Below are positions 22,837 to 64,000 of a stretch of 64,000 nt of DNA, in pieces. Below the pieces are notes generated by a model, which had not been told where the DNA came from, did no database searches, and saw nothing but the letters and a program-made list of their open reading frames with translations. Origin of the DNA: Octopus sinensis (taxonomy: Eukaryota); contig NC_043010.1 of the NCBI RefSeq assembly GCF_006345805.1, positions 13,020,001 to 13,084,000 of the forward strand, given 5' to 3'. A program made the translations under genes and the position numbers. Position 1 is the stretch's first letter; every line of letters begins with the position of its first letter.

Positions 22837-23231
22837 CAACAGCAAAATATATGTAGACAAGTGGTCTATTTAGATGAACTGCAAAGAGGAGACTCCCTTC
22901 CTTTACATGATAAAAATGGTCCTCTTCCCTTACATGATAAAAATGATCCACTTCCGTTACGTCTGTAACTCTGTAAAGATGACACTCCAGTGAATATTTT
23001 AACTAACAAACGAAGGTCAACTAAAAAATTTTCCATCAAATTATTTTCGCTTCTGCTAAGCTGCAGCGATTTAATTTACACTCATTGGTTTTTCATCAGT
23101 TCTCTCCCTTTAACCGTTTACTATTTCCGTGTTGAAAACTGAAAAGACGAAGAGACAGACAGGCAGACAGGGAGGCATTTCAACAGACAGACAGGCAGGT
23201 AGATAGACTGCGATAAGACAGTGAGTGGCCG

Positions 23232-24030
23232 GGATCTTTTCGGTTTGAACGGCAGTTTTTTAAAATAATTTCCACGCAACTAAACACTTTTAAACTTCGT
23301 ATAGTGGTAGAATGTGTTTATAAAACATCTTTTTCTCTTGGCTTTATTGAGAAAATTCTATAGCTTGTAAGATATTTGTTGGTTTTTTCTTCTTCAATTT
23401 CTGCAATTTCAACAATTCAATGACGTCTATTGAGGTTAAAAAAAACATTCTGTGCCGTATAAATATGTCCCTCGTTTAAGAAACAGATTGGGTTTCTCTT
23501 GTACTTGTTTCAGTCATTTGACTGCGGCCATGCTGGAGCACTGCCTTTAGTCGAGCAACTCGACTCCGGGACTTATTCTTTGTAAGCCCAGTGCTTATTC
23601 TATCAGTCTCTTTTGCCGAACCGCTAAGTGACAGGGACATAAACACACCAGCATCGGTTGTCAAGCAATGCTAGGGGGACAAACACAGACACACATATAT
23701 ATATTATATATATATATATACATACATACGACGAGCTTCTTTCAGTTTCCATCTACCAAATCCACTCACAAGGCTTTGGTCGGTCCAAGGCTATAGTAGA
23801 AGACACTTGCCCAAGGTGCCACGCAGAGGGACTGAACTCGGAACCATGTGGTTGGTAAGCAAGCTACTTACCACACAGCCACTGAAGAAAAAAAGATACC
23901 CTTTCCCCCACCCCTAACCCTAACCCTAAAACAGATTGAAATGCAATAGATCGATTCTAGGGTCATAATTATGGGTGACAATTTCATATGACACCGCTAG
24001 AAAAAGCTGCCGTTCAAACTAAAAAGATCC
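23232..24030 (-). mobile_element. GGATC-ended MITE (Merlin-like, tentative) with nested SINE A at 23496-23884
   Basis: TIRs GGATCTTTTCGGTTTGAACGGCAG / CTGCCGTTCAAACTAAAAAGATCC; 8-bp flanks AGTGGCCG and GGTGGCCA (6/8 identical). Confidence 0.85.
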
Positions 24031-24487
24031 GGTGGCCACACCATCTGACTACAGTAAGACCGAAACAGTAACATTTAAGTTGTGTAAGGGACTGGATGAA
24101 ATGGAGGTGCATATGGCTAACCACTGGCGTAGCTTGTGTACATACCGCCCCTGGACCCCACAAAAACACATACTGCCTTACAGCAGACACAAAAGTGCCG
24201 CCCTACTGTCACGTTCGTGTTAGATTGAGAGTATACAACCATTCTATATATATATATATGTATATTGTATATAGATAGACAGACAGACAGAAAGAATCAA
24301 AGATCTCAAAGCCAGTTTCCCGGATGAAGTGGCATATATATTTTCTCCCCTGGATGTGACTCCAGTCCCTTGCAGGATTACTCACTTTTGCTAGCTGAGT
24401 AGGCTGGAGCAACGAAGTGTTTTACTCAAGAACACAATCTTACAATCATGAGTAGTGCAACACCTTAACCAGCAAGCCAGGTACCTC

Positions 24488-24531
<44 letters not shown>

Positions 24532-24659
24532 AAAACGTGTATGTGTATATATGTATGTAGGTAGGTAGGTAGGTATGTACTTACATACATATGTACGTAC
24601 ATATGTGCATAGGTAGGTATAAAAAGGGAGGATTTATGATTTATATAGCTTATATATAT

Positions 24660-24890
24660 ATTTCTTTACTACCCACAAGGGGCTAAACACAGAGGGGACA
24701 AACAAGGACAGACAAACGGAGTAATTCGATTATATGACCCCAGTACATAACTGGTACTTATTTTATTGACTCCGAAAGGATGAAAGGCAAAGTCGACCTC
24801 GGCGGAATTTGAACTCAGAACGTAACAGCAGACGAAATACAGCTACGCATTTCGCCCGGCATGCTAATGGTTCTGCCAGCTCATCACCTA
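24660..24890 (-). mobile_element. SINE family B1
   Basis: Family consensus match. Confidence 0.93.
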
Positions 24891-25094
24891 CATATATATA
24901 TAGCTTATATATGTACAAGCATAGCTGTGTAGTTAAGATGTTTGCTTCCCAACTACGTAGTTTTAAGTTTAATCCCACAGTGTAGGCCCATGGACAAATG
25001 TCTTCTCTCATAGCCTTGAACTGACCAAAGCCTTGTGAATGAATTTGATAGATGGAGACTGAAAGAATCCTGAAAGAATATGTTTTTGTATGTA

Positions 25095-25500
25095 CTGGCA
25101 CTTGTGCCCCATGCTAGTAGGATGCTAAGAACACCATCCAAGCATGATCGTTGCCAGAGTGGCTAACTGGCTTCCGTGCCGGTGGCATGTAGGAGGCACC
25201 ATTCGAGTGGGATCGTCACCAGCATCGCCTTACTGGCACCTGTGCCGTTGGCATGTGTAAAAAAAATTTGAGCGAGGTCGTTGCCAGTACCGCCTGACTG
25301 GCCCCCGTGCTGGTGGCACATAAAAGCACCCACTACACTCTCGGAGTGGCTGGTGTTAGGAAGGGCATCCAGCTGTAGAAACTCTGCCAGATCAAGCCTG
25401 GAGCCTGGTGCAGCCATCTGGTTCGCCAGCCCACAGTCAAACTGTCCAACCCATGCTAGCATGGAAAACGGACGTTAAACGATGATGATGATGATGATGT
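25095..25500 (+). mobile_element. Repeat family C, long copy
   Basis: Subrepeats and (GAT)n tail. Confidence 0.88.
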
Positions 25501-26134
25501 ATATATGTATACACTTGTGTCTCCTTGTCTCGGCATTGTGATAATTGTGAGTATGACTGACACGCAAGTAGTGCCATTCATTTCAGATATTCTGTGAAAA
25601 GCATGTTTGGTCATTCGGAAATATCACCTTGTTGGGAAGCAGGCGAGTGTTGGCAACAAGAAGGGCAAGCATCCATTGTAGAAAGTCTACCTCAATAAAC
25701 TCTGTTTGAACCATGCAAGCATGGAAAAGAGGACACTGAAATGTTGATGATGGTAGTTCAAGTCTATTGATTATAGACATTATCCAGCAAATACAGTTAG
25801 CGTATTAGGTGTATATTATAGAAGATGGGCAAAAAATTGTAACCTCATCTACAAGAATGGAACCTCGTGTCTGTTGTAAACAGTATAACTATCATAACCA
25901 CCACACCAAAGTGATTATGCATCTCCAATCATCCAAATTAGAAGACTTAACCTAACAAGCTGGTTTCCTAATAACCACACCCTGTGTCAAAAAATAGCAT
26001 CACCTTTATCTAGTACAGAAAAAGATACCTGCTGTAAACTGCATATCTGTTCAAACCACAACACCAAAGGAATATCATAACTTTGACCATGCAAACTAGG
26101 ATTCATGGATGTTTATAGTTATATTGGACTACTT

Positions 26135-26545
26135 GGCGGCGAGCTGGCAGAGTTCTTAGCATGCCGGAGGAAATGCTTAGTGGTATTTCGTCTGCCGCTA
26201 CGTTCTGAGTTCAAATTCCACCGGGATCGACTTTGCCTTTCATCCTTTTGGGGTCGATTAAATAAGTACCAGTTGAGTACTGGGGTCGATATAATCGACT
26301 TAATCCGTTTGTCTGTCCTTGTTTGTCCTCTGTGTTTAGCCCCCTGTGGGTAGTAAAGAAATAGGTATTTTGTCTGCCGTTACATTCTGATTTCAAATTC
26401 CGCCGAAGTCGTCTTTGCCTTTCATCCTTCCGGGGTCGATAAATTAAGTACCAGTTATGCACTGGGGTCGATGTGATCGACTTAATACCTTTGTCTGTCC
26501 TTGTTTGTCCCCTCTATGTTTAGCCCCTTGTGGGTAATAAAGAAA
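26135..26545 (+). mobile_element. SINE B1 with a second head-truncated unit in tandem
   Basis: Tail AAAGAAATAGG runs directly into TATTTTGTCTGCCG at about 26365. Confidence 0.92.
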
Positions 26546-27303
26546 TATATATTGGATTACTTGATAGGGTGCATAGCTTGGAGATCAGGGTGTCTGAACC
26601 TGATGAGCAGCTATTTCTCTGCATTGAGAGGCCACAGCTCTGGTACTAGGAACTTTCTGGTGACTATAAAGAATTCTTCAAGCCAAGTCAACTAGCAGGA
26701 GACCTAGAGGGGAGATAATATCCTCAGTTTTAGTTCACAATGCTTGAGAATCCAGCCAAAAAGTCTATTGATGGTTGCTTTTGAAAGAATCTTGTAGAGA
26801 AGGTACCTGAACACTCTACCTCCATGAACCTCCCGGGAAGAGTGAGTGGTGAAAATAGATGGACAGACAGACAGACAGAATATGTTATGAGAATAAATGT
26901 TGGAGGACATAAAATTGGTGTTCATTCTGAAATGAAAAGCTAGTCAAAGATATCTAGCCATTACTCAACAGGGTACAGACTATGCAAATGATATTACAAT
27001 GATATTTAATACACTAGTTAATAGTAATTCTACCAAGCAAGTAGGGCTATGTTCATCAATGTAACAAAAACTGTGACTAATTTGCATATCAAGAGAGAGA
27101 GAGAGGAGGGGAAGCAGCATATATAAGAAATATACATATACAGAGAGGGAGCAGGAAAAAAGATTGTGGTAAATACATAGAGAGAGGGGAAAAGTGCAAA
27201 AGACAGAGAGAGATAGATAGACAGATAGAGAGAACTAGATTGACAGTTAAAAGATGTGACACGCACACACACACAAATGTAAACACACTCAGGTAATTGT
27301 GAA

Positions 27304-27523
27304 CCCTTCCATTACTGTATTTATTTTGAGATGCTCTGTGTTTCTTTCAATTATTTTAAATATAACAAAGAATTTAGTAAAATAACTTAGTTATTATTAA
27401 GCTAGTGTTAGGAATGTAAATTGTGACTAAAGCTTGGTGGAATATTTTAATTCAAAACTTATGAAAACAAGACATTTTACCACAGAGCCAGAGCTGGTTT
27501 TGGCCAGGTTAGTAACAAAAGGG
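27304..27523 (-). mobile_element. piggyBac-type MITE
   Basis: CCCTT..AAGGG ends with right TTAA; same body as 35393-35612. Confidence 0.85.
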
Positions 27524-27595
27524 TTAAGATTGGCATTCAATGTTGATTACAGAAGTTGAGTTGTTTCTCATAGCAAATTATATTCTTTGAATACA

Positions 27596-27830
27596 AGGCG
27601 GCGAGCTGGCAGAATCATTAGCACGCCGGGCGAAATGCATAGCCGTATTTCGTCTGCCGTTACGTTCTGAGTTCAAATTCCGCCGCGGTCGACTTTGCCT
27701 TTCATCCTTTCGTGGGTCGATAAATTAAGTACCAGTTACGCACTGGGGTCGATGTAATCGAGTTAATCCGTTTGTCTGTCCTTGTTTGTCCTCTCTGTGT
27801 TTAGCCCCTTGTGGGTAGTAAAGAAATATA
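27596..27830 (+). mobile_element. SINE family B1
   Basis: Family consensus match. Confidence 0.95.
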
Positions 27831-28106
27831 TATTCTTTGAATACAAATAACCAAAAAGCTGTGATGTAGATTTTGAAAATCAAATCTGCTTTTCTCTAAG
27901 AGGCACTGTTTCAAAGCCTTTTGGTAACATACAGACATACACTCTCATTTATAAAATAGACCATATAAGGAAATACTCTGCATGTGTGCAAAGAATGTAA
28001 TGCGGTACTAAAATTAATAGAGCTCAATGAAATACCCCTACCTGACTGAAATACCTACTAGGGTGCAAAGCAGTGACTAAAGTGTTTAAAGGCAGTACCC
28101 CAGTAA

Positions 28107-28705
28107 AAGAGTGGCTGTGTGGTAAGTAGCTTGCTAACCAACCACATGGTTCCAGGTTCAGTCCCACTGCGTGGCACCTTGGGCAAGTGTCTTCTACTAT
28201 AGCCTTGGGCTGACCAAAATCTTGAGAGTGGATTTGGTAGACGGAAACTGAAAGAAGCCTGTCATATGTGTGTGTGTGCTTGTGTGTTTTGTCTTCCCAA
28301 CATCGCTTGACAACCGATGCTGGTGTGTTTATGTCCCTGTAGCTTAGCGGTTCAGCAAAAGAGACCGATAGAATAAGCACTAGGCTCACAAAGAATAAGT
28401 CCCGGGGTCGAGTTGCTCGATTGAAGGCGGTGCTCCAGCATGGCCGCAGTCAACTGACTGAAACAAGTAAAGGAGTAAAAGAGTATATATGCGTGTGTGT
28501 GTTTGTGTGTCTGTGTTTGTCCCCCTAGCATTGCTTGACAACCGATGCTGGTGTGTTTATGTCCCCGTTACTTAGCGGTTCGGCAAAAAAGACCGTTAGA
28601 ATAAGTACTGGGCTTACAAAGAATAAGTCCCGGGTCGAGTTGCTCGACTAAAGGCGGTGCTCCAGCATGGCCGCAGTGAAATGACTGAAACAAGTAAAAG
28701 AGTAA
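28107..28705 (+). mobile_element. SINE family A plus tandem second 3' half
   Basis: Tail present twice (ends at about 28485 and 28705). Confidence 0.92.
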
Positions 28706-28933
28706 GCAGAATGTAGGCATGCTGCAGACTTTTAAAAATATAATTCTAGGCTTTAGATAATTTTTATTACTAGGTGAACATCTTTAAAAATCATGTTATC
28801 GGCTATCGTTTCTGTGTGTGTGTGCAAAATAGTATAACGAGTTATGTCCCTTAACATCAAAACTGTAACGTAGCAATACTCTTTTCCACACTAGAACACA
28901 AGGCCCGAAATTTTGGGGGTGAGGAGGCCAGTC

Positions 28934-29209
28934 GGATCTTTTCAGTTTGAACGGCAGTTTTTTCTAGCAGTGTCATATGAAATTGTCACCAATAATTATG
29001 ACCCTAGTATCGATCTATTGCATTTCAATCTGTTTTAGGGTTAGGGGTGGGGGAAGGGTATTTTTTTTCTTCACAAATGTAAATAAACCCAATCTGTTTC
29101 TTAAACGAGGGACATATTCATAAGGGCACAGAATGTTTTCACCTCAATAGACGTCATTGATTGGTTGAAATTGCAGAAATTGAAGAAAAACAACAACAAA
29201 TATCTTACA
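28934..29209 (+). mobile_element. GGATC-ended MITE, left part, truncated at a Gypsy fragment
   Basis: TIR GGATCTTTTCAGTTTGAACGGCAG; body matches 23232-24030. Confidence 0.88.
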
Positions 29210-29965
29210 TATGCATTAAAAGTTCTTCGGAGAAATATTCTCCTAGAGAAATACGACACCTTTATTTTATTTCACAATTTACTGTGGATATACGTTATAT
29301 CTATTTCTTTACTACCCAACAAGGGGCTAAACACAGAGAGGACGAACAAGGACAAACGGATTAAGTCGATTATATCGACTCCAGTGCATAACTGGTACTT
29401 ATTTAATCGACCACGAAAGGATGAAAGGCAAAGTGGACCTCGGCGGAATTTGAACTCAGAACGTAATGGCAGACGAAATACCGCTAAAGCATTTCGCCCG
29501 GTGTACTAATGTTTCTGCTAGCTTGCCGCCTGATATACGTTATATCAAGGGTGTTGAAAATTCAGCAGTAGATGCACTTTCTAGAATGAATGTAGATGCA
29601 TTAAATTCGCTAAACACAATAAATTTGGAAGAAATGTTTAAGGATCAAGTTGCGGATAAAGAATTTTCTTTACATAAAAATTCCAATTCAACTTTAAAAT
29701 TTAAAATGTTGCCGATCCATTCGTGTAATTCACATATTTGGTGTGATATTTCTACAGGTTTTTCGAGACCTGAAAAGCATAGAAAAGTTGTTTTCTCTAG
29801 CTTACATAATTTATCTCATCAGGTATAGAAGCTTCATTGAAATTAATATCAAGTCGTTTTGTTTGGCCTGGTATGAATAAAGATATTCGTTCCTGGGTCA
29901 AATCATGTATGCAGTGTCAAAAATCAAAAGTACATCGTCATATCAAAGCACCATTTGAAAATAAT
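29204..29965 (+). pseudogene. Ty3/Gypsy pol fragment (end of RNase H, linker, integrase HHCC zinc finger)
   Basis: LTYALK..SEKYSPREIRHLYFISQFTVDIRYI[SINE]KGVENSAVDALSR...LHNLSH/GIEASLKLISSRFVWPGMNKDIRSWVKSCMQCQKSKVHRH. Confidence 0.92.
29302..29531 (-). mobile_element. SINE B1 inserted in Gypsy pol with 15-bp TSD
   Basis: GATATACGTTATATC at 29287-29301 and 29532-29546. Confidence 0.95.
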
Positions 29966-29967
29966 AT

Positions 29968-30020
29968 ATATTGAAAAAAATATATATTGAAAAAAATATA
30001 TATTGAAAAAAATGTATATT
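29968..30020. repeat. 16-bp AT-rich tandem repeat (ATATATTGAAAAAAAT), about 3.5 copies
   Basis: Direct inspection. Confidence 0.85.
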
Positions 30021-30240
30021 ACGAATTTCTTTTTCGCAAAATTTTAACAATTTTTTTGGCAAAAGGCTGATGTAACAAATAGCCATTTTAGCTATATTGA
30101 AATGGTATCTTTATTACGATCATTGATGATCATATACAGAATGGAACAATACAGGACAAACAAAAGACAAAAATGTTTACATGTGTTCGAATGATTTAAA
30201 TATTAAAAATTTACTTAAAAAGTATTTTGGAGTGGCTCAT

Positions 30241-30629
30241 AGGCGCAGGAGTGGCTGTGTGGTAAGTAGCTTGCTAACCAACCATATGGTTCCGGGTTCA
30301 GTCCCACTGCGTGGCATCTTGGGCAAGTGTCTTCTGCTATAGCCCCGGGCCGACCAATGCCTTGTGAGTGGATTTGGTAAACGGAAACTGAAAGAAGCCT
30401 GTCGTTTATATGTGTTTGTGTGTCTGTGTTTGTCCCCCTAGCATTGCTTGACAACCGATGCTGGTGTGTTTACGTCCCCGTCACTAGCGGTTCGGCAAAA
30501 AGAGACCGATAGAATAAGTACTGGGCTTACAAAGAATAAGTCCCGGGGTCGATTTGCTCGACTAAAGGCGGTGCTCCAGCATGGCTGCAGTCAAATGACT
30601 GAAACAAGTAAAAGAGAGTAAAAGAGAGT
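30241..30629 (+). mobile_element. SINE family A, full length
   Basis: Family consensus match. Confidence 0.95.
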
Positions 30630-30639
30630 TTACCGATTA

Positions 30640-31355
30640 AATTTCCTTCAACTAGAACTTTTTTTAAATAAAACTAGAACAAAGAAAGAAAAACGAACAA
30701 AAAGGTTAAAAGATCGAACCCGGCAACCTATAAAGCCCAGCAACGATCTTTTCCTTTCATCAATGATTAAGCTGGGTTACTAACACCCACCTTTCTCATC
30801 ACATCCTTTCATCGTTTCTCGTATTCTCTCGGTGGTAGGGTCCTCCTCTCCAACCCCATCTTGCAGGCGGTGCGAGCTGGCAGAAACGTTAGCACGCCGG
30901 GCGAAATGCGTAGCTGTATTACGTCTGTCGTTATATTGTGAGTTCAAGTTCCGCCGGGGTCGATAAATTAAGTACCAGTTACGCACTGGGGTCGATGTAA
31001 TCGACTTAATACCTATGTCTGTCCTTGTTTGTCCTCTCTGTGTTTAGCCCCTCGTGGGTAATAAAGAAATAGGTATCTGAAGTAAGACAGTAAACTGGGG
31101 CCAGAGATGAAGGACCCTTTCACCGAACCTTCCATTCTCGTTCTCCAAACACACTCTTTCAGTACTGCAACCGTACAGTAAAAACAAACCTTACCTTCCT
31201 TTGAGAGTCCAGTTGGCGGTATCATCTTTATCATAGATTCAGCTGACAGCTGTACTCGCCCCAGATGTGACAGCACGTGTTCGACCTAACTTATCAAGCT
31301 GGATAGCTCCCGACATTGTACAATAGCATGCTGGACAGTTTCCTTGTCCACCCCG
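30640..31355 (-). pseudogene. Tx1/L1-like LINE ORF2 C-terminus and 3' UTR, split by SINE B1 (about 30871-31078, plus)
   Basis: CGVDKETVQHAIVQC (CxxxxEtxxHxxxxC zinc-knuckle tail)..*VEHVLSHLGRVQLSAES..GKVCFYCTVAVLKECVWRTR..FRY, resuming KMGLERRTLPPREYEKR* beyond the SINE. Confidence 0.7.
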
Positions 31356-31859
31356 CATCTTAGTTATTTTGAAATACGGCGCGAATTGGCAATATGACGT
31401 AATGTCGTATTGCCGAAGAATGATTATTTTCGTTTTTTCCATTGGTTAATATAACTGCTCATATAAGGATTCTAAAAGGTTACGTAAAGAATATTTGTAA
31501 TGGATTTCGATTCTTTTCAGTCAAGTTGAGCAGTTATAAAAACCCTGGATTTTAGGAAAAACTTTAGTGTTTTGTTGGATGTAACTGAACTCCACGACAC
31601 TCACTCCTTTGAGACATTGGTAATTTTCATGCCATGTCCAAAGATAATCACAAGTCTATTTTGATTTGTTGATTAATATATATTAGTTAGATTTACGAAT
31701 TAGTTAATGAATATATAGTCGTACTTCTACACGACGGAAATTGTCTTTCCTTTCTAATGTAAATAATATAAAATGTTATATTTATATAATAAAACTAATT
31801 AAGAAAATGTTTCTCTTCACGTTTTTTATCAACTGAGTATAAATAAATATGCATTTCTG

Positions 31860-32405
31860 GGATCTTTTCCTTTTGAACGGCAGTTTTCGTATACTGGTAG
31901 AATGTGTCAAAATAAAACATTTTTTTTCTCTTGGCTTTCTTGAGAAAATTGTAATTTGTAAGTTTAACGTTGTTCAATTTTTCGAATTTTAACCAATTGA
32001 TGGCCTCTATTGAGCTAAAATTATTTGCTGCGTCTAAAACTGAGACAACATCCTGTCACTAACCCTAACCCTAAATTTTAGCCTTTCGTTTCTTTTTTCT
32101 TAATTGTTATCCTTAAATTAATTTAACAATTAAGAAAAAAAACGAAAGGCTAAAATTTAGGGTTAGGGTTAGTGACAGGATGTTGTCTCATTTTTAGACG
32201 CAGCAAATGATTTTAGCTCAATAGAGGCCATCGATTGGTTAAAATTCGAAAAATTAAACTACGTTAAACTTACAAATTACAATTTTCTCAAGAAATCCAG
32301 GAGAAAGAATGTTTTATTTGACACGTTCTACCAGTATACGAAGTTTAAAAGTGTTTAGTTTACTAGAAATTGTGTTGAAAACTGCCTTTCAAAAGGAAAA
32401 GATCT
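31860..32405. mobile_element. Fold-back MITE with GGATC termini and about 250-bp inverted arms
   Basis: Arms meet at about 32105-32120; the left arm has an internal deletion; TIR related to the 23232 family. Confidence 0.88.
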
Positions 32406-32826
32406 TAAACCCAATCTGTTTCTTAAACGAGGGACATATTCATACGGCACAGACTGTTTTCACCTCAATAGACGTCATTGAATGGTTGAAATTGCAGAAA
32501 TTGAAGAAAAAACAACCAACAAATATCTTACAAACAATAGAATTTTCTCAATAAAGCCAAGAGAAAATGATGTTTTATAAACACATTCTACCAGTATACG
32601 AAGTTTAAAAGTGTTTAGTTACGTGGAATTATTTTTAAAAACTGCCGTTCAAACCGAAAAGATCCTGGGTTTATTTACATTTGTGAAGAAAGAAAAGATA
32701 CCCTTCCCCCCACCCCTAACCCTAAAACACATTGAAATGCAATAGATCAATACTAGGGTCATAATTATGGGTGACAATTTCATATGACATCGCTAGAAAA
32801 AACTGCCGTTCAAACCGAAAAAATCC
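32406..32826. mobile_element. GGATC-ended MITE with its two halves in opposite orientation
   Basis: 32406-32665 is the right half (plus); 32666-32826 is the left half inverted; TAAACCCA and TGGGTTTA at the breakpoints. Confidence 0.88.
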
Positions 32827-32869
32827 TGTCTTTAAACCTTTTATTAAAACAAGATAATAAAAACAATTT

Positions 32870-32950
32870 TCAAATGTTCTTTCGCGTTACGTCGTTTTTC
32901 TTGCGGAATCACGTGGCTTGGAACCAATTACCGCCGTAACTTGAGGTATG
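32870..32950 (+). promoter_or_regulatory. Possible CpG-rich promoter or non-coding first exon
   Basis: Non-repeat CpG cluster, CACGTG E-box, CCAAT, donor-like TTGAG|GTATGC at about 32945. Confidence 0.3.
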
Positions 32951-33059
32951 CCTGTATAGTCACGTCATCTAATAACATAGTGTATAATAGCAGTGGTGTA
33001 AGAGTTGCGTCCCTTTAATGGCTTTTCAAATTCAAGTTTGTTAATAATAAAAATATTTC

Positions 33060-33657
33060 ATTCAAATTTTGATATAAGGCCAGCAGTTTTACTGTGAAAG
33101 AGTTGTTGATTTTATCAGTCTCTGTTCTTGGGTGGTACTTTATTGTTGACCTCGAAGGGTTGAAAGGTCAAGCTGACATCAACAGCATTTTAGCTCATTT
33201 GACGGAATTTGAACTCAGGACGTAAAGACAGATGAAATACCTATTTCTTTACTACCCACAAGGGGCTAAACACAGAGGGAACAAACAAGGACAGACAAAC
33301 GGATTAAGTCGATTATATCGACCCCAGTGCGTAACTGGTGCTTTATTTATCGACTCCGAAAGGATAAAAGGCAAAGTCGACCTTGGTGGAATTTGAACTC
33401 AGAACGTAGCGGCAGACGAAATACCTATTTCTTTATTACCCACAAGGAGCTAAACACAGAAGGGAGAAATAAGGACAGACAAACGGATTAAGTCGATTAT
33501 ATCAACCCCAGTGCGTAACTGGTACTTATTTAATCGACCCCGAAAGGATGAAAGGCAAAGTTGACCTTGGTGGAATTTGAACTCAGAACGTAGCAGCAGA
33601 TGAAATACTGCTAAGTATTACTCCTGGCATGCTAACATTTCTGCCAGCTCGCCGCCT
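33060..33657 (-). mobile_element. SINE B1 tandem array (one head plus about 2.5 further units), overlapping a B2 remnant
   Basis: Junction GACGAAATACCTATTTCTTT recurs at about 33240 and 33420. Confidence 0.92.
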
Positions 33658-38295: not shown

Positions 38296-39533
38296 GGGTC
38301 ATCCCATAACTAATGCGGTTTTTTTCAATTGCATGAACAAAAAGTGGAAACTACCTACCTCAACTTGCTATAAAAGAAGGTGGTCGTTTTATCTTGTTCT
38401 TATTTTTAGTGCAAGTTTTGAAGAGTGCAGTTCGATTTTTACAGTTATTTTCTCAATGCTATATGCAAAGGAGCACATTTGGCATAATTTTCTTTATGAG
38501 TTCAATAAAGGTAACAAAGCAACAGAAAGGGCGAGGAATATCAATGCAGTATATGGGGATTGGACAATAAGTGTAAGCTGGTGTCAATAGTGGTTCCAGA
38601 AATTCTAAGCCGGAAACTACAACCTAGAAGACAAGCCTCATCCTGGAAGATCTGTAGAACTTGAGAAGGATTTCCTGTAAACCCTGGTGGAACAAAATCT
38701 CATTGTAGCTATTGAGGAACTAGCAGAGAAGCTTGGATTTGGTCATTCAATCATTCATTGATACCTGCATGCCATTGGAAGGGTCAGCAAATTGGGTCAA
38801 TGGGTTCCTCATAAACTTCCTGAGTCTAATCACGCACAGAGAGTGAATTTGTGCTCTTCTTTGCTTGCACCTACCCCGAATGAACCGTTTTTGGACCGAA
38901 AAGTAACTGGTGATGAGAAATGGGTTCTCTATAAAAATATCAAGCGCCAAAGACAGTGGATAGGGAAAGGAGAAACACCGGTATTCCAAGCTAAATAAGG
39001 TTTTCACCCACGTAAGCTGTTGTTATCTGTCTGAAGGGATATAAAAGGTTTAGTCTACATTGAACTTTTAAACCCAAACCAAATGATAACAAAGAAATCT
39101 GCTGCAAGTAGCTTAAGTCAGCACTAGAAGTAAAACAACCATCTTTGGCTTCAAGACAAAAGGTGCTCTTCCATCAGGATAATGTTCGGCCACATTCAGC
39201 AAGGAAGTTGACGCAGTTTGAATGGGAAACTATGCCCCATCCACCATATTTGCCAGACATTGCCCCATCTGATTATCATTTAGTCCACAATCTTCAAAAT
39301 CATTTGGATGGAAAATATATGAATTTTGTAGATGAGGTGAGAAAAGTACAAGAGGAGTATTTTTCATCAGGCACAAGTGAATTTTGGAAGAGGGGCTTTG
39401 CAAGTCAACCAAATAGATGGAAGAGCATTGTAGAAAATGATGCAGAGTATATTTTAAATTAAAAGAGAACTTTGTTTATCTTAATTTTGAAAAATAAAAG
39501 GATAAAAACCGCATTATTTATGGGATGATCCAA
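38294..39533 (+). mobile_element. Mariner (Tc1/mariner) DNA transposon, full length, inactive
   Basis: About 29-bp TIRs TAGGGTCATCCCATAACTAATGCGGTTTT / AAAACCGCATTATTTATGGGATGATCCAA in a TA run; about 1.24 kb. Confidence 0.96.
38456..39462 (+). pseudogene. Mariner transposase pseudogene
   Basis: WVPHKL, TGDEKW, HQDNVRPH and HPPYLPDIAPSDYHL motifs; multiple stops; D-to-D spacing is 30 rather than 34. Confidence 0.95.
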
Positions 39534-42913: not shown

Positions 42914-43376
42914 GAAGCTGGCTACCTGCGTGGTTCTTGGTCTCAAGCATTTGTCTTATGAAGAAAGGCTGAAGACACTCGACCTTTATTCTCTTGAAAA
43001 TGATGACGCCGTGGTGATCTCATTCTCGCTCAAACATCATAAGTGGAAAGTGTAACCTCTCGAAAGAGCTGTTCTTCACTCCTGCTCCAGAGCATCGGCT
43101 GCGGGGTCACTCTGAAAAGCTGTATCTACGACGATTTCATCTCAATCGAAGGAGAGGGGCTTTCTCCGTTCGGGTTGTGGATCCGTGGAATAAGCAGCTG
43201 GACGAGATAGTGAAGATGCCGACGACCGCTCGGTTCAAAGTCTCTCTTGACCAGAAATGGCCTGAACTCTTTGTTTGACCACCCTCCCTGTACATAACTT
43301 CCTGTCCCCCTAACATGGCCTTGCTTTTGCTTTTTGAGCCAATAAAAATTGAATTGAATTGAATTGAATTGAATTG
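42914..43376 (+). mobile_element. CR1-like LINE 3' end with (AATTG)n tail
   Basis: LGLKHLSYEERLKTLDLYSLE..RGHSEKL..FSVRVVDPWNK..FKVSLDQKWPELF*. Confidence 0.9.
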
Positions 43377-47336: not shown

Positions 47337-47862
47337 TGAAGTTAAGTTAAGTTAATTTTTTGGCTCAAAAAGCAAAAAGCAAGGCCATGTAGGGGGACAT
47401 GGAGTTATGTACAGGGTGGTGTTCATGCAAAGAGTTCAGGCCATTTCTGGTCAAGAGAGACTTTGAACCGAGCAGTCATCGGCATCTTCACTATCTTGTT
47501 CGGCAGCTTAATCCGCGGATCCGCAACCCAGACGGAGAAAGCCCCTCTCCTTCGAGTGAGATGAAACCGTCGCAGATAGAGCTTTTCGGAGTGACCCCGC
47601 AGCCGACGCTCTGGAGCACGAGTGAAGAACAGCTCTTTCGAGAGGTTACACTTCCCGCTTATGATGTTGTGAGGAAAAATGAGATCACCTCAGCGTCGTC
47701 GTTTTTCTAGAGAATAAAGGTCGAGCGTCTTCAGCCTTTCTTCATAAGACAAATGCTTGAGACCAAGAACCATGTGGGTAGCCAGCTTCTGGACTCTTTC
47801 GAGATGCTGTATGTCTTTGAGGAGATAAGGAGAAGAGGCTTGAATCCCGTACTTCAATATGT
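47337..47862 (-). mobile_element. CR1-like LINE 3' end, same family as 42914-43376, (AACTT)n tail
   Basis: ILKYGIQASSPYLLKDIQHLERVQKLATHMVLGLKHLSYEERLKTLDLYSLEKRRR. Confidence 0.92.
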
Positions 47863-47982
47863 GTTTGTGTGTGTGTGTGTAAACATAAATGTGTGTGGTG
47901 TGCATGTGTGTCTGAGTGCACGTGCATTTGTGTTTGTGCATGCATGCATATCTCTATGTATGTATCAATATGTATACACCTA

Positions 47983-62722: not shown

Positions 62723-63272
62723 CCCTTTCGTTACTGTATTTATTTTGAGATACTCTGCGTTTCTTTCAAATACGTTAAATATACGGAGATGTACTCGCAT
62801 AGCAAGTGATTTGATCTGAGATCGTGTGCTGGAACGAAAACAACTGCAGCATGGAAGGTGTTTGTAAGCCATTTAAGAAACACACAAAAGCCGTTCGATT
62901 CACTTCAACATTTAAGTTTAATTTGTCAAAATATTTTCTTCGCTATAAGACCGCGACCTGTTCACTGATGCAGCACGGATTTTTGTCAGTGAACAGGTCG
63001 CGGTCTTATAGCGACGAAAATATTTTGACAAATTAAACTTAAATGTTGAAGTGAATCGAACAGCTTTTGTGTGTTTCTTAAATGGCTTACAAACATCTTC
63101 CACTTTAAATATAACAAAGAATTTAGTAAAATAACTTAGTTATCATACAGTTAGTTTTAGGAACGTTAATTGTGATTAAGGTTTGGTGATAAATTTTAGT
63201 TCAAAACTTTTGAAAACAAGACGTTTGTACTCAGAGCCAAAGCCAGTTTCATCTGGGTTGGTAACGAAAGGG
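62723..63272 (-). mobile_element. piggyBac-type MITE with nested palindromic insert (62784-63102)
   Basis: TTAA TSD on both sides; TIR CCCTTTCGTTAC; body matches 35393-35612. Confidence 0.92.
62853..63101. repeat. 116-bp inverted repeat with 17-nt spacer
   Basis: Arms 62853-62968 and 62986-63101; 3 mismatches by eye. Confidence 0.95.
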
Positions 63273-63324
63273 TTAAGGAAATTAAAAGGTTCAAAAGGCT
63301 GTTCAGAAGCAATTTTTAGCTTCC

Positions 63325-63909
63325 TTTGCCCAGGTAACCAAATTATTCTCACAACCATTGAAATTATTTGCCCAGGTAACGAAATTATTCTCACAACCAT
63401 TGAAATTATTTGCCCAGGTAACCAAATTATTCTCACAACCATTGAAATTATTTGCCCAGGTAACCAAATTATTCTCACAACCATTGAAATTATTTGCCCA
63501 GGTAACCAAATTATTCTCACAACCATTGAAATTATTTGCCCAGCTAACCAAATTATTCTCACAACCATTGAAATTATTTGCCCAGGTAAGCAAATTATTC
63601 TCACAATCATTGAAATTATTTGCCCAGGTAACCAAATTATTCTCACAACCATTGAAAATAATTGCCCTGGTAACCAAATTATTCTCACAACCATTGAAAT
63701 TATTTGCCCAGGTAAGCAAATTATTCTCACAACCATTGAAATTATTTGCCCAGCTAACCAAATTATTCTCACAACCATTGAAATTATTTGCCCAGCTAAC
63801 CAAATTATTCTCACAACCATTGAAATTATTTGCCCAGGTAACCAAATTACTCTCACAACCATTGAAATTATTTGCCCAGGTAACCAAATTATTCTCACAA
63901 CCATTGAAA
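63325..63909. repeat. 42-bp minisatellite, about 14 units
   Basis: Unit TTTGCCCAGGTAACCAAATTATTCTCACAACCATTGAAATTA; near-identical units with no spacers. Confidence 0.98.
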
Positions 63910-64000
63910 GAATGGTTGTGAGAATAAGAACAGAATGTAGAATGTTCAGGAAGATTTTTACTTTTACTAATAACAAAGTTTCATTCTCTGAGTAAAAAGT

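What the first reader, a model, noticed from the sequence alone, without database searches (positions are those of the whole stretch)
31860..32826. Footprint of reversed-ends alternative transposition: inversion bounded by an inverted TSD
The order is fold-back MITE end | TAAACCCA (32406-32413) + right half + TIR | TGGGTTTA (32666-32673) + left half inverted + TIR. In the unrearranged copy TAAACCCA occurs once (29084-29091). This is the expected product if the facing ends of two neighbouring MITEs were used together, the spacer was lost, and the ends inserted into the second MITE. The mechanism is established for maize Ac/Ds. A natural example in a mollusc would show these MITEs rearrange the genome.
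Basis: partly seen in the sequence, partly recalled or inferred. Interest (0 to 1): 0.7.

Follow-up and report, generated by a model that had tools for sequence, protein, structure and literature searches.

The report
Transposase-made inversion inside an octopus MITE
In a repeat-rich stretch of an octopus genome, one small non-autonomous DNA transposon has half of itself flipped. The junctions look exactly like the product of a transposase using the ends of two neighbouring elements at once, a process known from maize and flies that I could not confirm here with independent reads or a sister genome.

Summary
A 546-bp fold-back MITE (31860-32405) abuts TAAACCCA plus the right half and right terminal inverted repeat (TIR) of a 413-bp MITE (32406-32665). 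That TIR abuts TGGGTTTA plus the inverted left half and left TIR (32666-32826). Against the collinear copy (28934-29209), the two halves overlap by exactly 8 bp.

Both new junctions sit at the last base of a TIR. The only complete copy in the window has an 8-bp flanking duplication (6/8). Neither the fold-back element, nor the split MITE, nor the whole composite has matching flanks. This excludes insertion of the composite as a unit. It also excludes "nested insertion then inversion".

- **Not tested:** mis-assembly, copy number of the permuted form, and the orthologous locus. No octopus DNA collection could be searched.
- **Family:** the TIRs start with 5'-GG, which fits Merlin better than hAT.
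- **Scale:** the event is small (260 bp inverted, a spacer of unknown length lost) and old, with no visible gene consequence.

This is a new example of a known mechanism, of modest interest.

The parts
31852..31859 (.). Left flank of the fold-back MITE (CATTTCTG). It has no matching 8-mer at any right-hand end of the complex.
   Evidence: 2/8 against 32406-32413, 2/8 against 32666-32673 and 3/8 against 32827-32834.
31860..32405 (.). Fold-back (palindromic) MITE of 546 bp. Both arms are homologous to the right half of the 413-bp MITE. The central loop is 32110-32123. The left arm lacks about 35 bp that the right arm keeps (32343-32376). It lies just outside the inversion, and its right end is one of the two ends used.
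   Evidence: I1, I3, I7, I12; arms 92.6% identical; right arm 83% identical to the E right half.
32377..32405 (+). Right terminal inverted repeat of the fold-back MITE, of the fold-back type (..CCTTTT..). Junction J1 lies after 32405. The last base is T instead of the expected C.
32406..32413 (+). TAAACCCA, one copy of the 8-bp target duplication, at J1.
32406..32665 (+). The inverted segment (260 bp): target 8-mer, right half of the 413-bp MITE and its right TIR (32637-32665).
   Evidence: 95% to 29084-29209; 93% to 23495-23229 on the minus strand.
32666..32673 (-). TGGGTTTA, the second copy of the target duplication in inverted orientation, at J2 directly after the last base of the right TIR.
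32666..32826 (-). Left half of the 413-bp MITE with its left TIR (32798-32826), in its inferred original (minus) orientation.
   Evidence: 93% to 29091-28934; 89% to 23883-24030.
32827..32834 (.). Right flank TGTCTTTA, presumed to be one copy of the split MITE's original target duplication. Its partner is absent.
28934..29209 (+). Reference copy 2, collinear across the site, with TAAACCCA once at 29084-29091. It is truncated at 29209/29210, where a gypsy-like pol fragment begins.
23232..24030 (-). Reference copy 1, with both ends present and flanks AGTGGCCG (23224-23231) and GGTGGCCA (24031-24038), which match 6/8 in register. A SINE (23496-23882) interrupts it within 11 bp of the same internal site.

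Best explanation
This is the product of one alternative (reversed-ends type) cut-and-paste transposition event. Inferred ancestral state: a fold-back MITE, then a spacer of unknown length, then a complete 413-bp MITE of the same TIR family in minus orientation, with its right-type end facing the fold-back element. A transposase paired the two facing termini (the right end of the fold-back MITE and the right end of the 413-bp MITE) and cut both. The spacer between them, which carried one copy of each element's original target duplication, was lost. The two termini, each still attached to its chromosome arm, then attacked a target with an 8-bp stagger inside the second MITE, at TAAACCCA. Joining in the inversion mode flipped the 260 bp between the MITE's right end and the target, and gap repair duplicated the 8-mer in inverted orientation. 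Shown: the anatomy, the exact junctions, the 8-bp overlap and the lack of flanking duplications. Inferred: the ancestral arrangement, the involvement of a transposase and the loss of a spacer. The family is probably Merlin-like (5'-GG termini, about 8-bp duplications) rather than hAT, so Ac/Ds is an analogue and not a relative.
For: (1) Exact 8-bp overlap of the two halves relative to collinear copy 2, with colinearity of the rejoined element. (2) J1 and J2 fall exactly after the last base of a TIR. (3) Both ends are right-facing and are followed by the 8-mer and its reverse complement. This is the geometry required when the two ends of one transposition complex join a staggered target in inversion mode, and it is described for Ac/fAc inversions as 8-bp repeats precisely at the termini, with one TE inside and one just outside the inversion and the inter-element fragment lost (PMC8225341; PMC2775673 Fig. 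S1D). (4) The family's own duplication is about 8 bp: copy 1 flanks match 6/8 in register, with a window null of P(>=6)=0.017. (5) No flanking duplication exists for the fold-back element (2/8), for 31860-32665 (2/8) or for the composite (3/8). This is expected if the partners left with the spacer. (6) The TIRs of the two elements are near-identical (26/28), so one transposase could bind both, and each TIR keeps its own type over its full length, so none is chimeric. (7) All four family members of the window lie within 9.6 kb, with none in the other 54 kb or in 146 kb of other Octopus DNA. This fits local hopping, which puts elements close enough for two-element events.
Against: This is a single locus with no read-level, population or outgroup support. 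The family's duplication length rests on one imperfect copy. The last base of the fold-back element at J1 is T rather than C. Both ends used are right-type ends, and it is not known whether the (unidentified) transposase accepts such a pair, although the fold-back element itself has two such ends. The internal site is evidently break-prone: in copy 1 a SINE sits within 11 bp of it, with an 11-bp deletion. Coinciding breaks are therefore less improbable than a uniform model suggests. No autonomous partner was found.
Confidence: 0.6

Rival explanations
1. The permuted structure is a member of an amplified composite subfamily. The rearrangement, by whatever mechanism, happened once elsewhere, and the 967-bp unit (fold-back left TIR to inverted left TIR) later transposed to this site.
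For: The composite has a left-facing TIR at 31860 and a right-facing TIR at 32826, so it could in principle be mobilised. Copy number in the genome could not be measured.
Against: The 8-mers flanking the composite match only 3/8, which is chance level, whereas the one intact family copy keeps 6/8. No second copy of either junction exists in the window or in 146 kb of other Octopus DNA.
Confidence: 0.1
2. Two steps without reversed-ends transposition. The fold-back MITE inserted normally into the 413-bp MITE at TAAACCCA, giving an ordinary direct 8-bp duplication. The block 'fold-back MITE + right half' was then inverted, either by recombination between the inverted TIRs or by excision and back-ligation.
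For: This produces exactly the observed order and the inverted 8-mers (my derivation). TIRs of the two elements are 26/28 identical and the arms are about 83% similar.
Against: It leaves the outer flanks of the 413-bp MITE untouched, so 31852-31859 and 32827-32834 should be a direct 8-bp repeat, but they match 3/8. Recombination inside the TIRs should give chimeric TIRs. Instead, 31860-31888 is fold-back type and 32637-32665 is E type over their whole length, which leaves only the outermost 10 bp for a crossover. According to PMC8225341, NAHR creates no new duplication.
Confidence: 0.07
3. Independent fragments or transposase-independent repair. Two separately truncated copies, or breaks at a fragile AT-rich site repaired by end joining, happen to lie next to each other and to the fold-back MITE.
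For: The site is break-prone: in copy 1 a SINE is inserted, with an 11-bp deletion, within 11 bp of it. The region is densely packed with repeats.
Against: This needs an overlap of exactly 8 bp (about 1/413), plus two joins exactly at the last base of TIRs, plus both halves being closest to the same reference copy. No filler or microdeletion is present at either junction.
Confidence: 0.08
4. Assembly artefact. Reads from several similar MITEs were joined wrongly in a region full of inverted repeats.
For: There are four related TIR-bearing segments and a 546-bp near-palindrome within 1 kb. No reads were available.
Against: Mis-joins occur inside shared sequence. They do not occur at the exact terminus of a TIR with a transposon-length duplication of unique internal sequence. 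The two halves are not copies of any other element in the window (93-97% identity).
Confidence: 0.07
5. Sister-chromatid transposition, or self-integration of a single 413-bp MITE followed by re-entry of the inversion circle, without the fold-back MITE's end taking part.
For: Both give a junction 'right TIR | TGGGTTTA + inverted left half' (my derivation).
Against: Both predict an E-type left TIR in front of TAAACCCA + right half. The TIR there is fold-back type and continues into fold-back-specific sequence. The circle-integration variant also predicts matching flanks at 31852-31859 and 32827-32834, which match only 3/8. The sister-chromatid variant predicts TAAACCCA + right half after 32826, which is absent.
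Confidence: 0.03

Closest known systems
[quoted passage not shown] 2021, PMC8225341)
   Same: Facing termini of two nearby elements act as one transposon. The inter-element segment is lost. The inversion runs from one terminus to the target. An 8-bp duplication sits precisely at both termini, with one element inside and one outside the inversion.
   Different: The maize events were caught de novo with known progenitors and span 80 kb or more. Here the progenitor is inferred, the inversion is 260 bp and the target lies inside one of the two participating elements. The elements are MITEs with 5'-GG termini and are probably not hAT.
P-element hybrid element insertion in Drosophila (Gray, Tanaka and Sved 1996; summarised in PMC2775673)
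   Same: It is an aberrant transposition that uses ends from two element copies and gives inversions, deletions and duplications next to the element, with new 8-bp duplications.
   Different: The two ends come from sister chromatids or homologues at the same site. Here they come from two different elements, and the TIR types differ.
Tn10/IS10 inside-end 'deletion/inversion' events in bacteria (from memory)
   Same: The topology is the same: the inner ends of two flanking elements attack nearby DNA, the segment between them is lost and adjacent DNA is inverted or deleted, with a target duplication.
   Different: It is a bacterial composite transposon with a 9-bp duplication. The resemblance is mechanistic only.
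Galileo/Foldback-mediated natural inversions in Drosophila buzzatii by ectopic recombination (PMC2775673)
   Same: These are natural inversions bounded by fold-back-like cut-and-paste elements, diagnosed from the pattern of target duplications.
   Different: There the elements are chimeric, the pre-existing duplications are exchanged and no new duplication is made. Here the TIRs are not chimeric and a new duplication of internal MITE sequence is present.
Merlin superfamily MITEs (Feschotte 2004; PMC8101967)
   Same: The TIRs of about 29 bp have a conserved terminal 5'-GG, and the target duplications are 8 (or 9) bp. Merlin families are annotated in Octopus vulgaris (PMC13282606).
   Different: No transposase partner was found here. 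The duplication length rests on one 6/8 pair plus the inverted 8-mer.

Membership tests
Reversed-ends (two-element) transposition product, inversion class | Both rearrangement junctions lie exactly at transposon termini. | tested here: met
   J1 lies after 32405 and J2 after 32665. Both are the last base of a TIR. The J1 terminal base is T instead of C.
Reversed-ends (two-element) transposition product, inversion class | A new duplication of target-site length sits at the two junctions, in inverted orientation, and is single-copy in the unrearranged sequence. | tested here: met
   TAAACCCA at 32406-32413 and TGGGTTTA at 32666-32673. The 8-mer occurs once in copy 2, at 29084-29091.
Reversed-ends (two-element) transposition product, inversion class | One element lies just outside the inverted segment and one terminus lies inside it. 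| tested here: met
   The fold-back MITE 31860-32405 is outside. The right TIR 32637-32665 is at the far end of the inverted 260 bp.
Reversed-ends (two-element) transposition product, inversion class | The inter-element segment is lost, so each participating element lacks one copy of its original target duplication. | tested here: met
   No flank pair matches better than 3/8, against 6/8 for intact copy 1. The spacer itself cannot be observed.
Reversed-ends (two-element) transposition product, inversion class | The progenitor arrangement (two intact elements plus a spacer) is seen in another haplotype or species. | not testable with these tools
   No octopus DNA collection can be searched. The TIR pattern scans hit only bacterial chance matches. 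Window ORFs are absent from the protein index.
Inversion by ectopic recombination (NAHR) between inverted TE copies | The elements at the breakpoints are chimeric, pre-existing duplications are exchanged and no new duplication is made. | tested here: not met
   The TIRs keep their own type over their full length. A new duplication of internal MITE sequence is present. The outer flanks do not match.
Merlin superfamily (non-autonomous member) | The TIRs have a conserved terminal 5'-GG (PMC8101967). | tested here: met
   Six of the seven TIRs in the window start GGAT. The seventh starts AGAT.
Merlin superfamily (non-autonomous member) | The target-site duplication is 8 or 9 bp. | tested here: inconclusive
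   One complete copy has 6/8 in register (P=0.017), and the inverted pair is 8 bp. A ninth base does not match. The sample size is 1.
Merlin superfamily (non-autonomous member) | An autonomous partner with the same TIRs encodes a DDE_Tnp_IS1595 transposase. | not testable with these tools
   No coding partner exists in the window or in the 146 kb of Octopus DNA fetched.
hAT superfamily (non-autonomous member) | The target duplication is 8 bp, and short TIRs have the usual hAT terminal motif (YARNG, from memory). | tested here: not met
   A length of 8 bp is compatible, but the termini are GGATC and not CAG/TAG-like. The motif is recalled from memory, not taken from a library.

The most novel reading that the evidence does not exclude
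Merlin-type MITEs in octopus carry out two-element (reversed-ends) transposition. This locus would then be a first sequence-level footprint of that reaction outside hAT and P elements, and the first in a mollusc. It would imply that clustered MITEs are an endogenous source of inversions and deletions in the heavily rearranged cephalopod genomes.
Probability: 0.3. Interest if true: 0.55.

Novelty: new member of a known kind. Interest (0 to 1): 0.38.

Why it matters
Alternative transposition is well documented in experiments with maize Ac/Ds, Drosophila P and bacterial IS10. Natural footprints in animal genomes are rarely shown: the best-studied natural TE-associated inversions in flies turned out to be ectopic recombination (PMC2775673). 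If this locus holds up, it gives a clean diagnostic pattern, namely TIR-exact junctions plus an inverted duplication of target-site length and missing original duplications. That pattern could be searched genome-wide in cephalopods to ask how much of their structural change is made by transposases. On its own, the event is tiny (260 bp inverted, a spacer of unknown length lost). It is also old (the copies differ by 3-6%) and lies in gene-free repeat DNA, so no phenotype is expected.

Tried and rejected
- **Pattern scans for more family copies.** I scanned for the TIR pattern in the viral, metagenome and bacterial-genome contig collections. There were six hits, all bacterial or metagenomic, and none had homology beyond the 23-26 nt of the pattern.
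- **MITE copies through spurious ORFs.** A junction-spanning 44-aa ORF had no homologue. Ten window ORFs, including the 81-aa ORF across J1, are not in the protein collection.
- **Sampling octopus DNA through proteins.** A LINE fragment led to O. vulgaris OX597823.1. SINE-derived peptides led to four O. bimaculoides loci. This gave 146 kb in all with no copy of either MITE. A further protein had no contig on record. This left no extra evidence on duplication length, no test of an amplified subfamily and no orthologous locus.
- **More diverged copies in the window.** nhmmer found none.
- **Host exons to anchor an ortholog.** Only low-complexity and TE/SINE-derived ORFs turned up. Pfam found nothing in four TE-like fragments, and no Rfam family or tRNA was found.
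- **Two short similarities rejected as chance.** The first is a 26-nt match at 81% between 31741-31766 and the end of the left half (I10), which nhmmer does not support. The second is the TTAAACC-like string in the right flank at 32832-32838.
- **Rejected models.** Nested insertion plus inversion, circle re-integration, sister-chromatid transposition and a macrotransposon insertion into a second copy are each contradicted by the flanks or the TIR types.

Full report
**What is in the sequence.** Reading 31500-33300 and comparing the region with the whole window gives three abutting pieces.

- **Piece 1, 31860-32405.** This is a 546-bp fold-back MITE. Its termini (31861-31888 and 32377-32404) are 96% complementary and its arms (31922-32096 and 32135-32309) are 95% complementary. 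The loop is 14 nt (32110-32123). The right arm keeps about 35 bp that the left arm lacks.
- **Piece 2, 32406-32665.** This is TAAACCCA followed by the right half and right TIR of a second, 413-bp MITE, which I call E.
- **Piece 3, 32666-32826.** This is TGGGTTTA followed by the left half and left TIR of E, reverse-complemented.

The window holds only seven TIRs of this family (none expected by chance) and four elements:

- the fold-back MITE;
- the split E;
- copy 2 (28934-29209, + strand, truncated on the right);
- copy 1 (24030 down to 23232, minus strand, both ends present, interrupted by a SINE at 23496-23882).

Against copy 2, the right piece starts at 29084 and the inverted left piece ends at 29091. 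The two halves therefore share exactly the 8 bp TAAACCCA, which copy 2 has once. Rejoining the halves on that overlap gives a 413-bp element collinear with copy 2 and, SINE aside, with copy 1. Both halves are closest to copy 2: 95.3% and 97.4% substitution identity, against 93.6% and 95.2% to copy 1. This fits one source element. Two independent truncations would give an 8-bp overlap about once in 413, and here both breaks also coincide with the last base of a TIR.

**What the junctions say.** Both TIR ends at the new junctions face right. One is followed by the 8-mer and the other by its reverse complement. A normal insertion places the duplication as a direct repeat outside a left-facing and a right-facing end. 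If both ends are drawn right-facing, one is followed by the duplication and the other by its complement. The two ends thus behave like the two ends of a single transposition complex that joined a staggered 8-bp target, but they belong to two different elements and remained attached to the chromosome. This is the definition of the inversion outcome of reversed-ends transposition. [quoted passage not shown] S1D). Working backwards gives a unique progenitor: fold-back MITE, then a spacer, then a complete E in minus orientation.

**Tests that could have failed.**

1. *Duplication length of the family.* The one copy with both flanks has AGTGGCCG and GGTGGCCA, which match 6/8 in register. The window null is P(>=6/8)=0.017. 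This agrees with 8 bp, although the sample is a single copy.
2. *Flanks.* If the composite had been inserted as a unit, 31852-31859 and 32827-32834 should repeat. The same holds if the fold-back MITE had first nested in E at TAAACCCA and the block was later inverted by recombination or re-ligation. They are CATTTCTG and TGTCTTTA, which match 3/8, at chance level. The fold-back MITE alone (2/8) and 31860-32665 (2/8) also lack duplications. Missing partners are what spacer loss predicts.
3. *TIR types.* E-type ends read GGATCTTTTC(G/A)GTTTG and fold-back ends read GGATCTTTTCCTTTTG. Each TIR in the complex is of one type over its full length. There is therefore no sign of the chimeric repeats expected from ectopic recombination.
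4. *Single-element models.* Sister-chromatid transposition and re-integration of a self-integration circle both need an E-type left TIR in front of TAAACCCA. The TIR there is fold-back type and runs on into fold-back-specific sequence.

**What remains open.** I could not reach any octopus DNA collection by sequence.

- The TIR pattern scans returned only bacterial chance hits.
- ORFs of the MITEs are not in the protein index.
- Protein-anchored sampling identified the source as an Octopus genome. A LINE fragment is 82% identical to an O. vulgaris product, and SINE peptides match O. bimaculoides proteins.
- That sampling yielded 146 kb without a single family copy.

Mis-assembly, amplification of the permuted form and the orthologous state are therefore untested. 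Three smaller weaknesses remain. The fold-back terminus at J1 ends in T, not C. Both ends used are right-type ends. The internal site is evidently break-prone, since copy 1 carries a SINE with an 11-bp deletion within 11 bp of it.

**Family.** The TIRs are about 29 bp, begin 5'-GG and go with a duplication of about 8 bp. That is the published signature of Merlin: 'conserved terminal 5'-GG-3', flanked by 8-bp or 9-bp TSDs' (PMC8101967). Merlin families are annotated in O. vulgaris (PMC13282606). hAT shares the 8 bp but, from memory, not the termini. No transposase partner is in reach, so membership stays open. Ac/Ds should be read as the mechanistic analogue only.

**Context.** The four elements sit within 9.6 kb (23.2-32.8 kb), with none elsewhere in 200 kb examined. 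This fits local hopping, which is the situation that brings compatible ends close together. The window has no recognisable host exon, Rfam family or tRNA, so no functional consequence is visible.

**Verdict.** It is a new example of a known mechanism in a new host and probably a different superfamily. It is small, old and unverified by independent data, so interest is about 0.38.

Noticed in passing
window 23496-23882 (within MITE copy 1, 23232-24030): A 5'-truncated SINE is inserted between ..CTTCA and AAACCCA of copy 1, and 11 bp of the MITE (CAAATGTAAAT) are lost. The insertion is within 11 bp of the very site that serves as the 8-bp target in the rearranged copy. The A-rich stretch AAATGTAAATAAACCC may be a preferred break or insertion site.
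   Followed up: partly
window 23911-23928, 28999-29012, 32063-32077, 32157-32171, 32717-32730: Both the left half of the 413-bp MITE and the inner arms of the fold-back MITE carry two to three TTAGGG telomere-type units (for example TTAGGGTTAGGGTTAGGGG in copy 1).
   Followed up: no
window 23232-32826: All four members of this MITE family lie within 9.6 kb. None is in the remaining 54 kb of the window, nor in 146 kb of O. vulgaris and O. bimaculoides DNA fetched (L007-L011).
   Followed up: partly
window 32827-32834 versus 32666-32673: The 8-mer after the left TIR (TGTCTTTA) resembles the 8-mer after the right TIR (TGGGTTTA) at 6/8 positions. The window null is P=0.017. This could be chance or a weak target preference (TGnnTTTA).
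   Followed up: partly
window 29210-29830: Copy 2 of the MITE is cut off at 29209/29210, where a degenerate gypsy-like pol fragment (..YIKGVENSAVDALSR..) begins. The fragment is itself interrupted by a SINE flanked by the 15-bp repeat GATATACGTTATATC. Pfam found nothing at E<=0.01.
   Followed up: partly
window 42914-43342 (+) and 47341-47864 (-): Two 3' ends of the same LINE family lie in inverted orientation about 4 kb apart. They are 87-89% identical in DNA to a copy on O. vulgaris OX597823.1, and the 47.4-47.95 kb copy is 82% identical in protein to O. vulgaris P0001.
   Followed up: partly
window 38297-39459 (+): Three adjacent ORF fragments look like a decayed mariner-type transposase (..FHQDNVRPHSA.., ..PYLPDIAPSDYHL..). 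This is by motif from memory only, and the Pfam scan gave no hit.
   Followed up: partly
window 63176-64000, and 50-60 kb: A minisatellite lies at the right end of the window, and microsatellite and low-complexity tracts cover about 10 kb (GC down to 25%). They produce long spurious ORFs in several frames.
   Followed up: no
L001 3353-3377 and L004 2296-2320: A marine-metagenome contig and a Lewinella MAG contig share an identical 25-nt match to the fold-back TIR, with no homology beyond it. They are probably the same organism and a chance match.
   Followed up: partly
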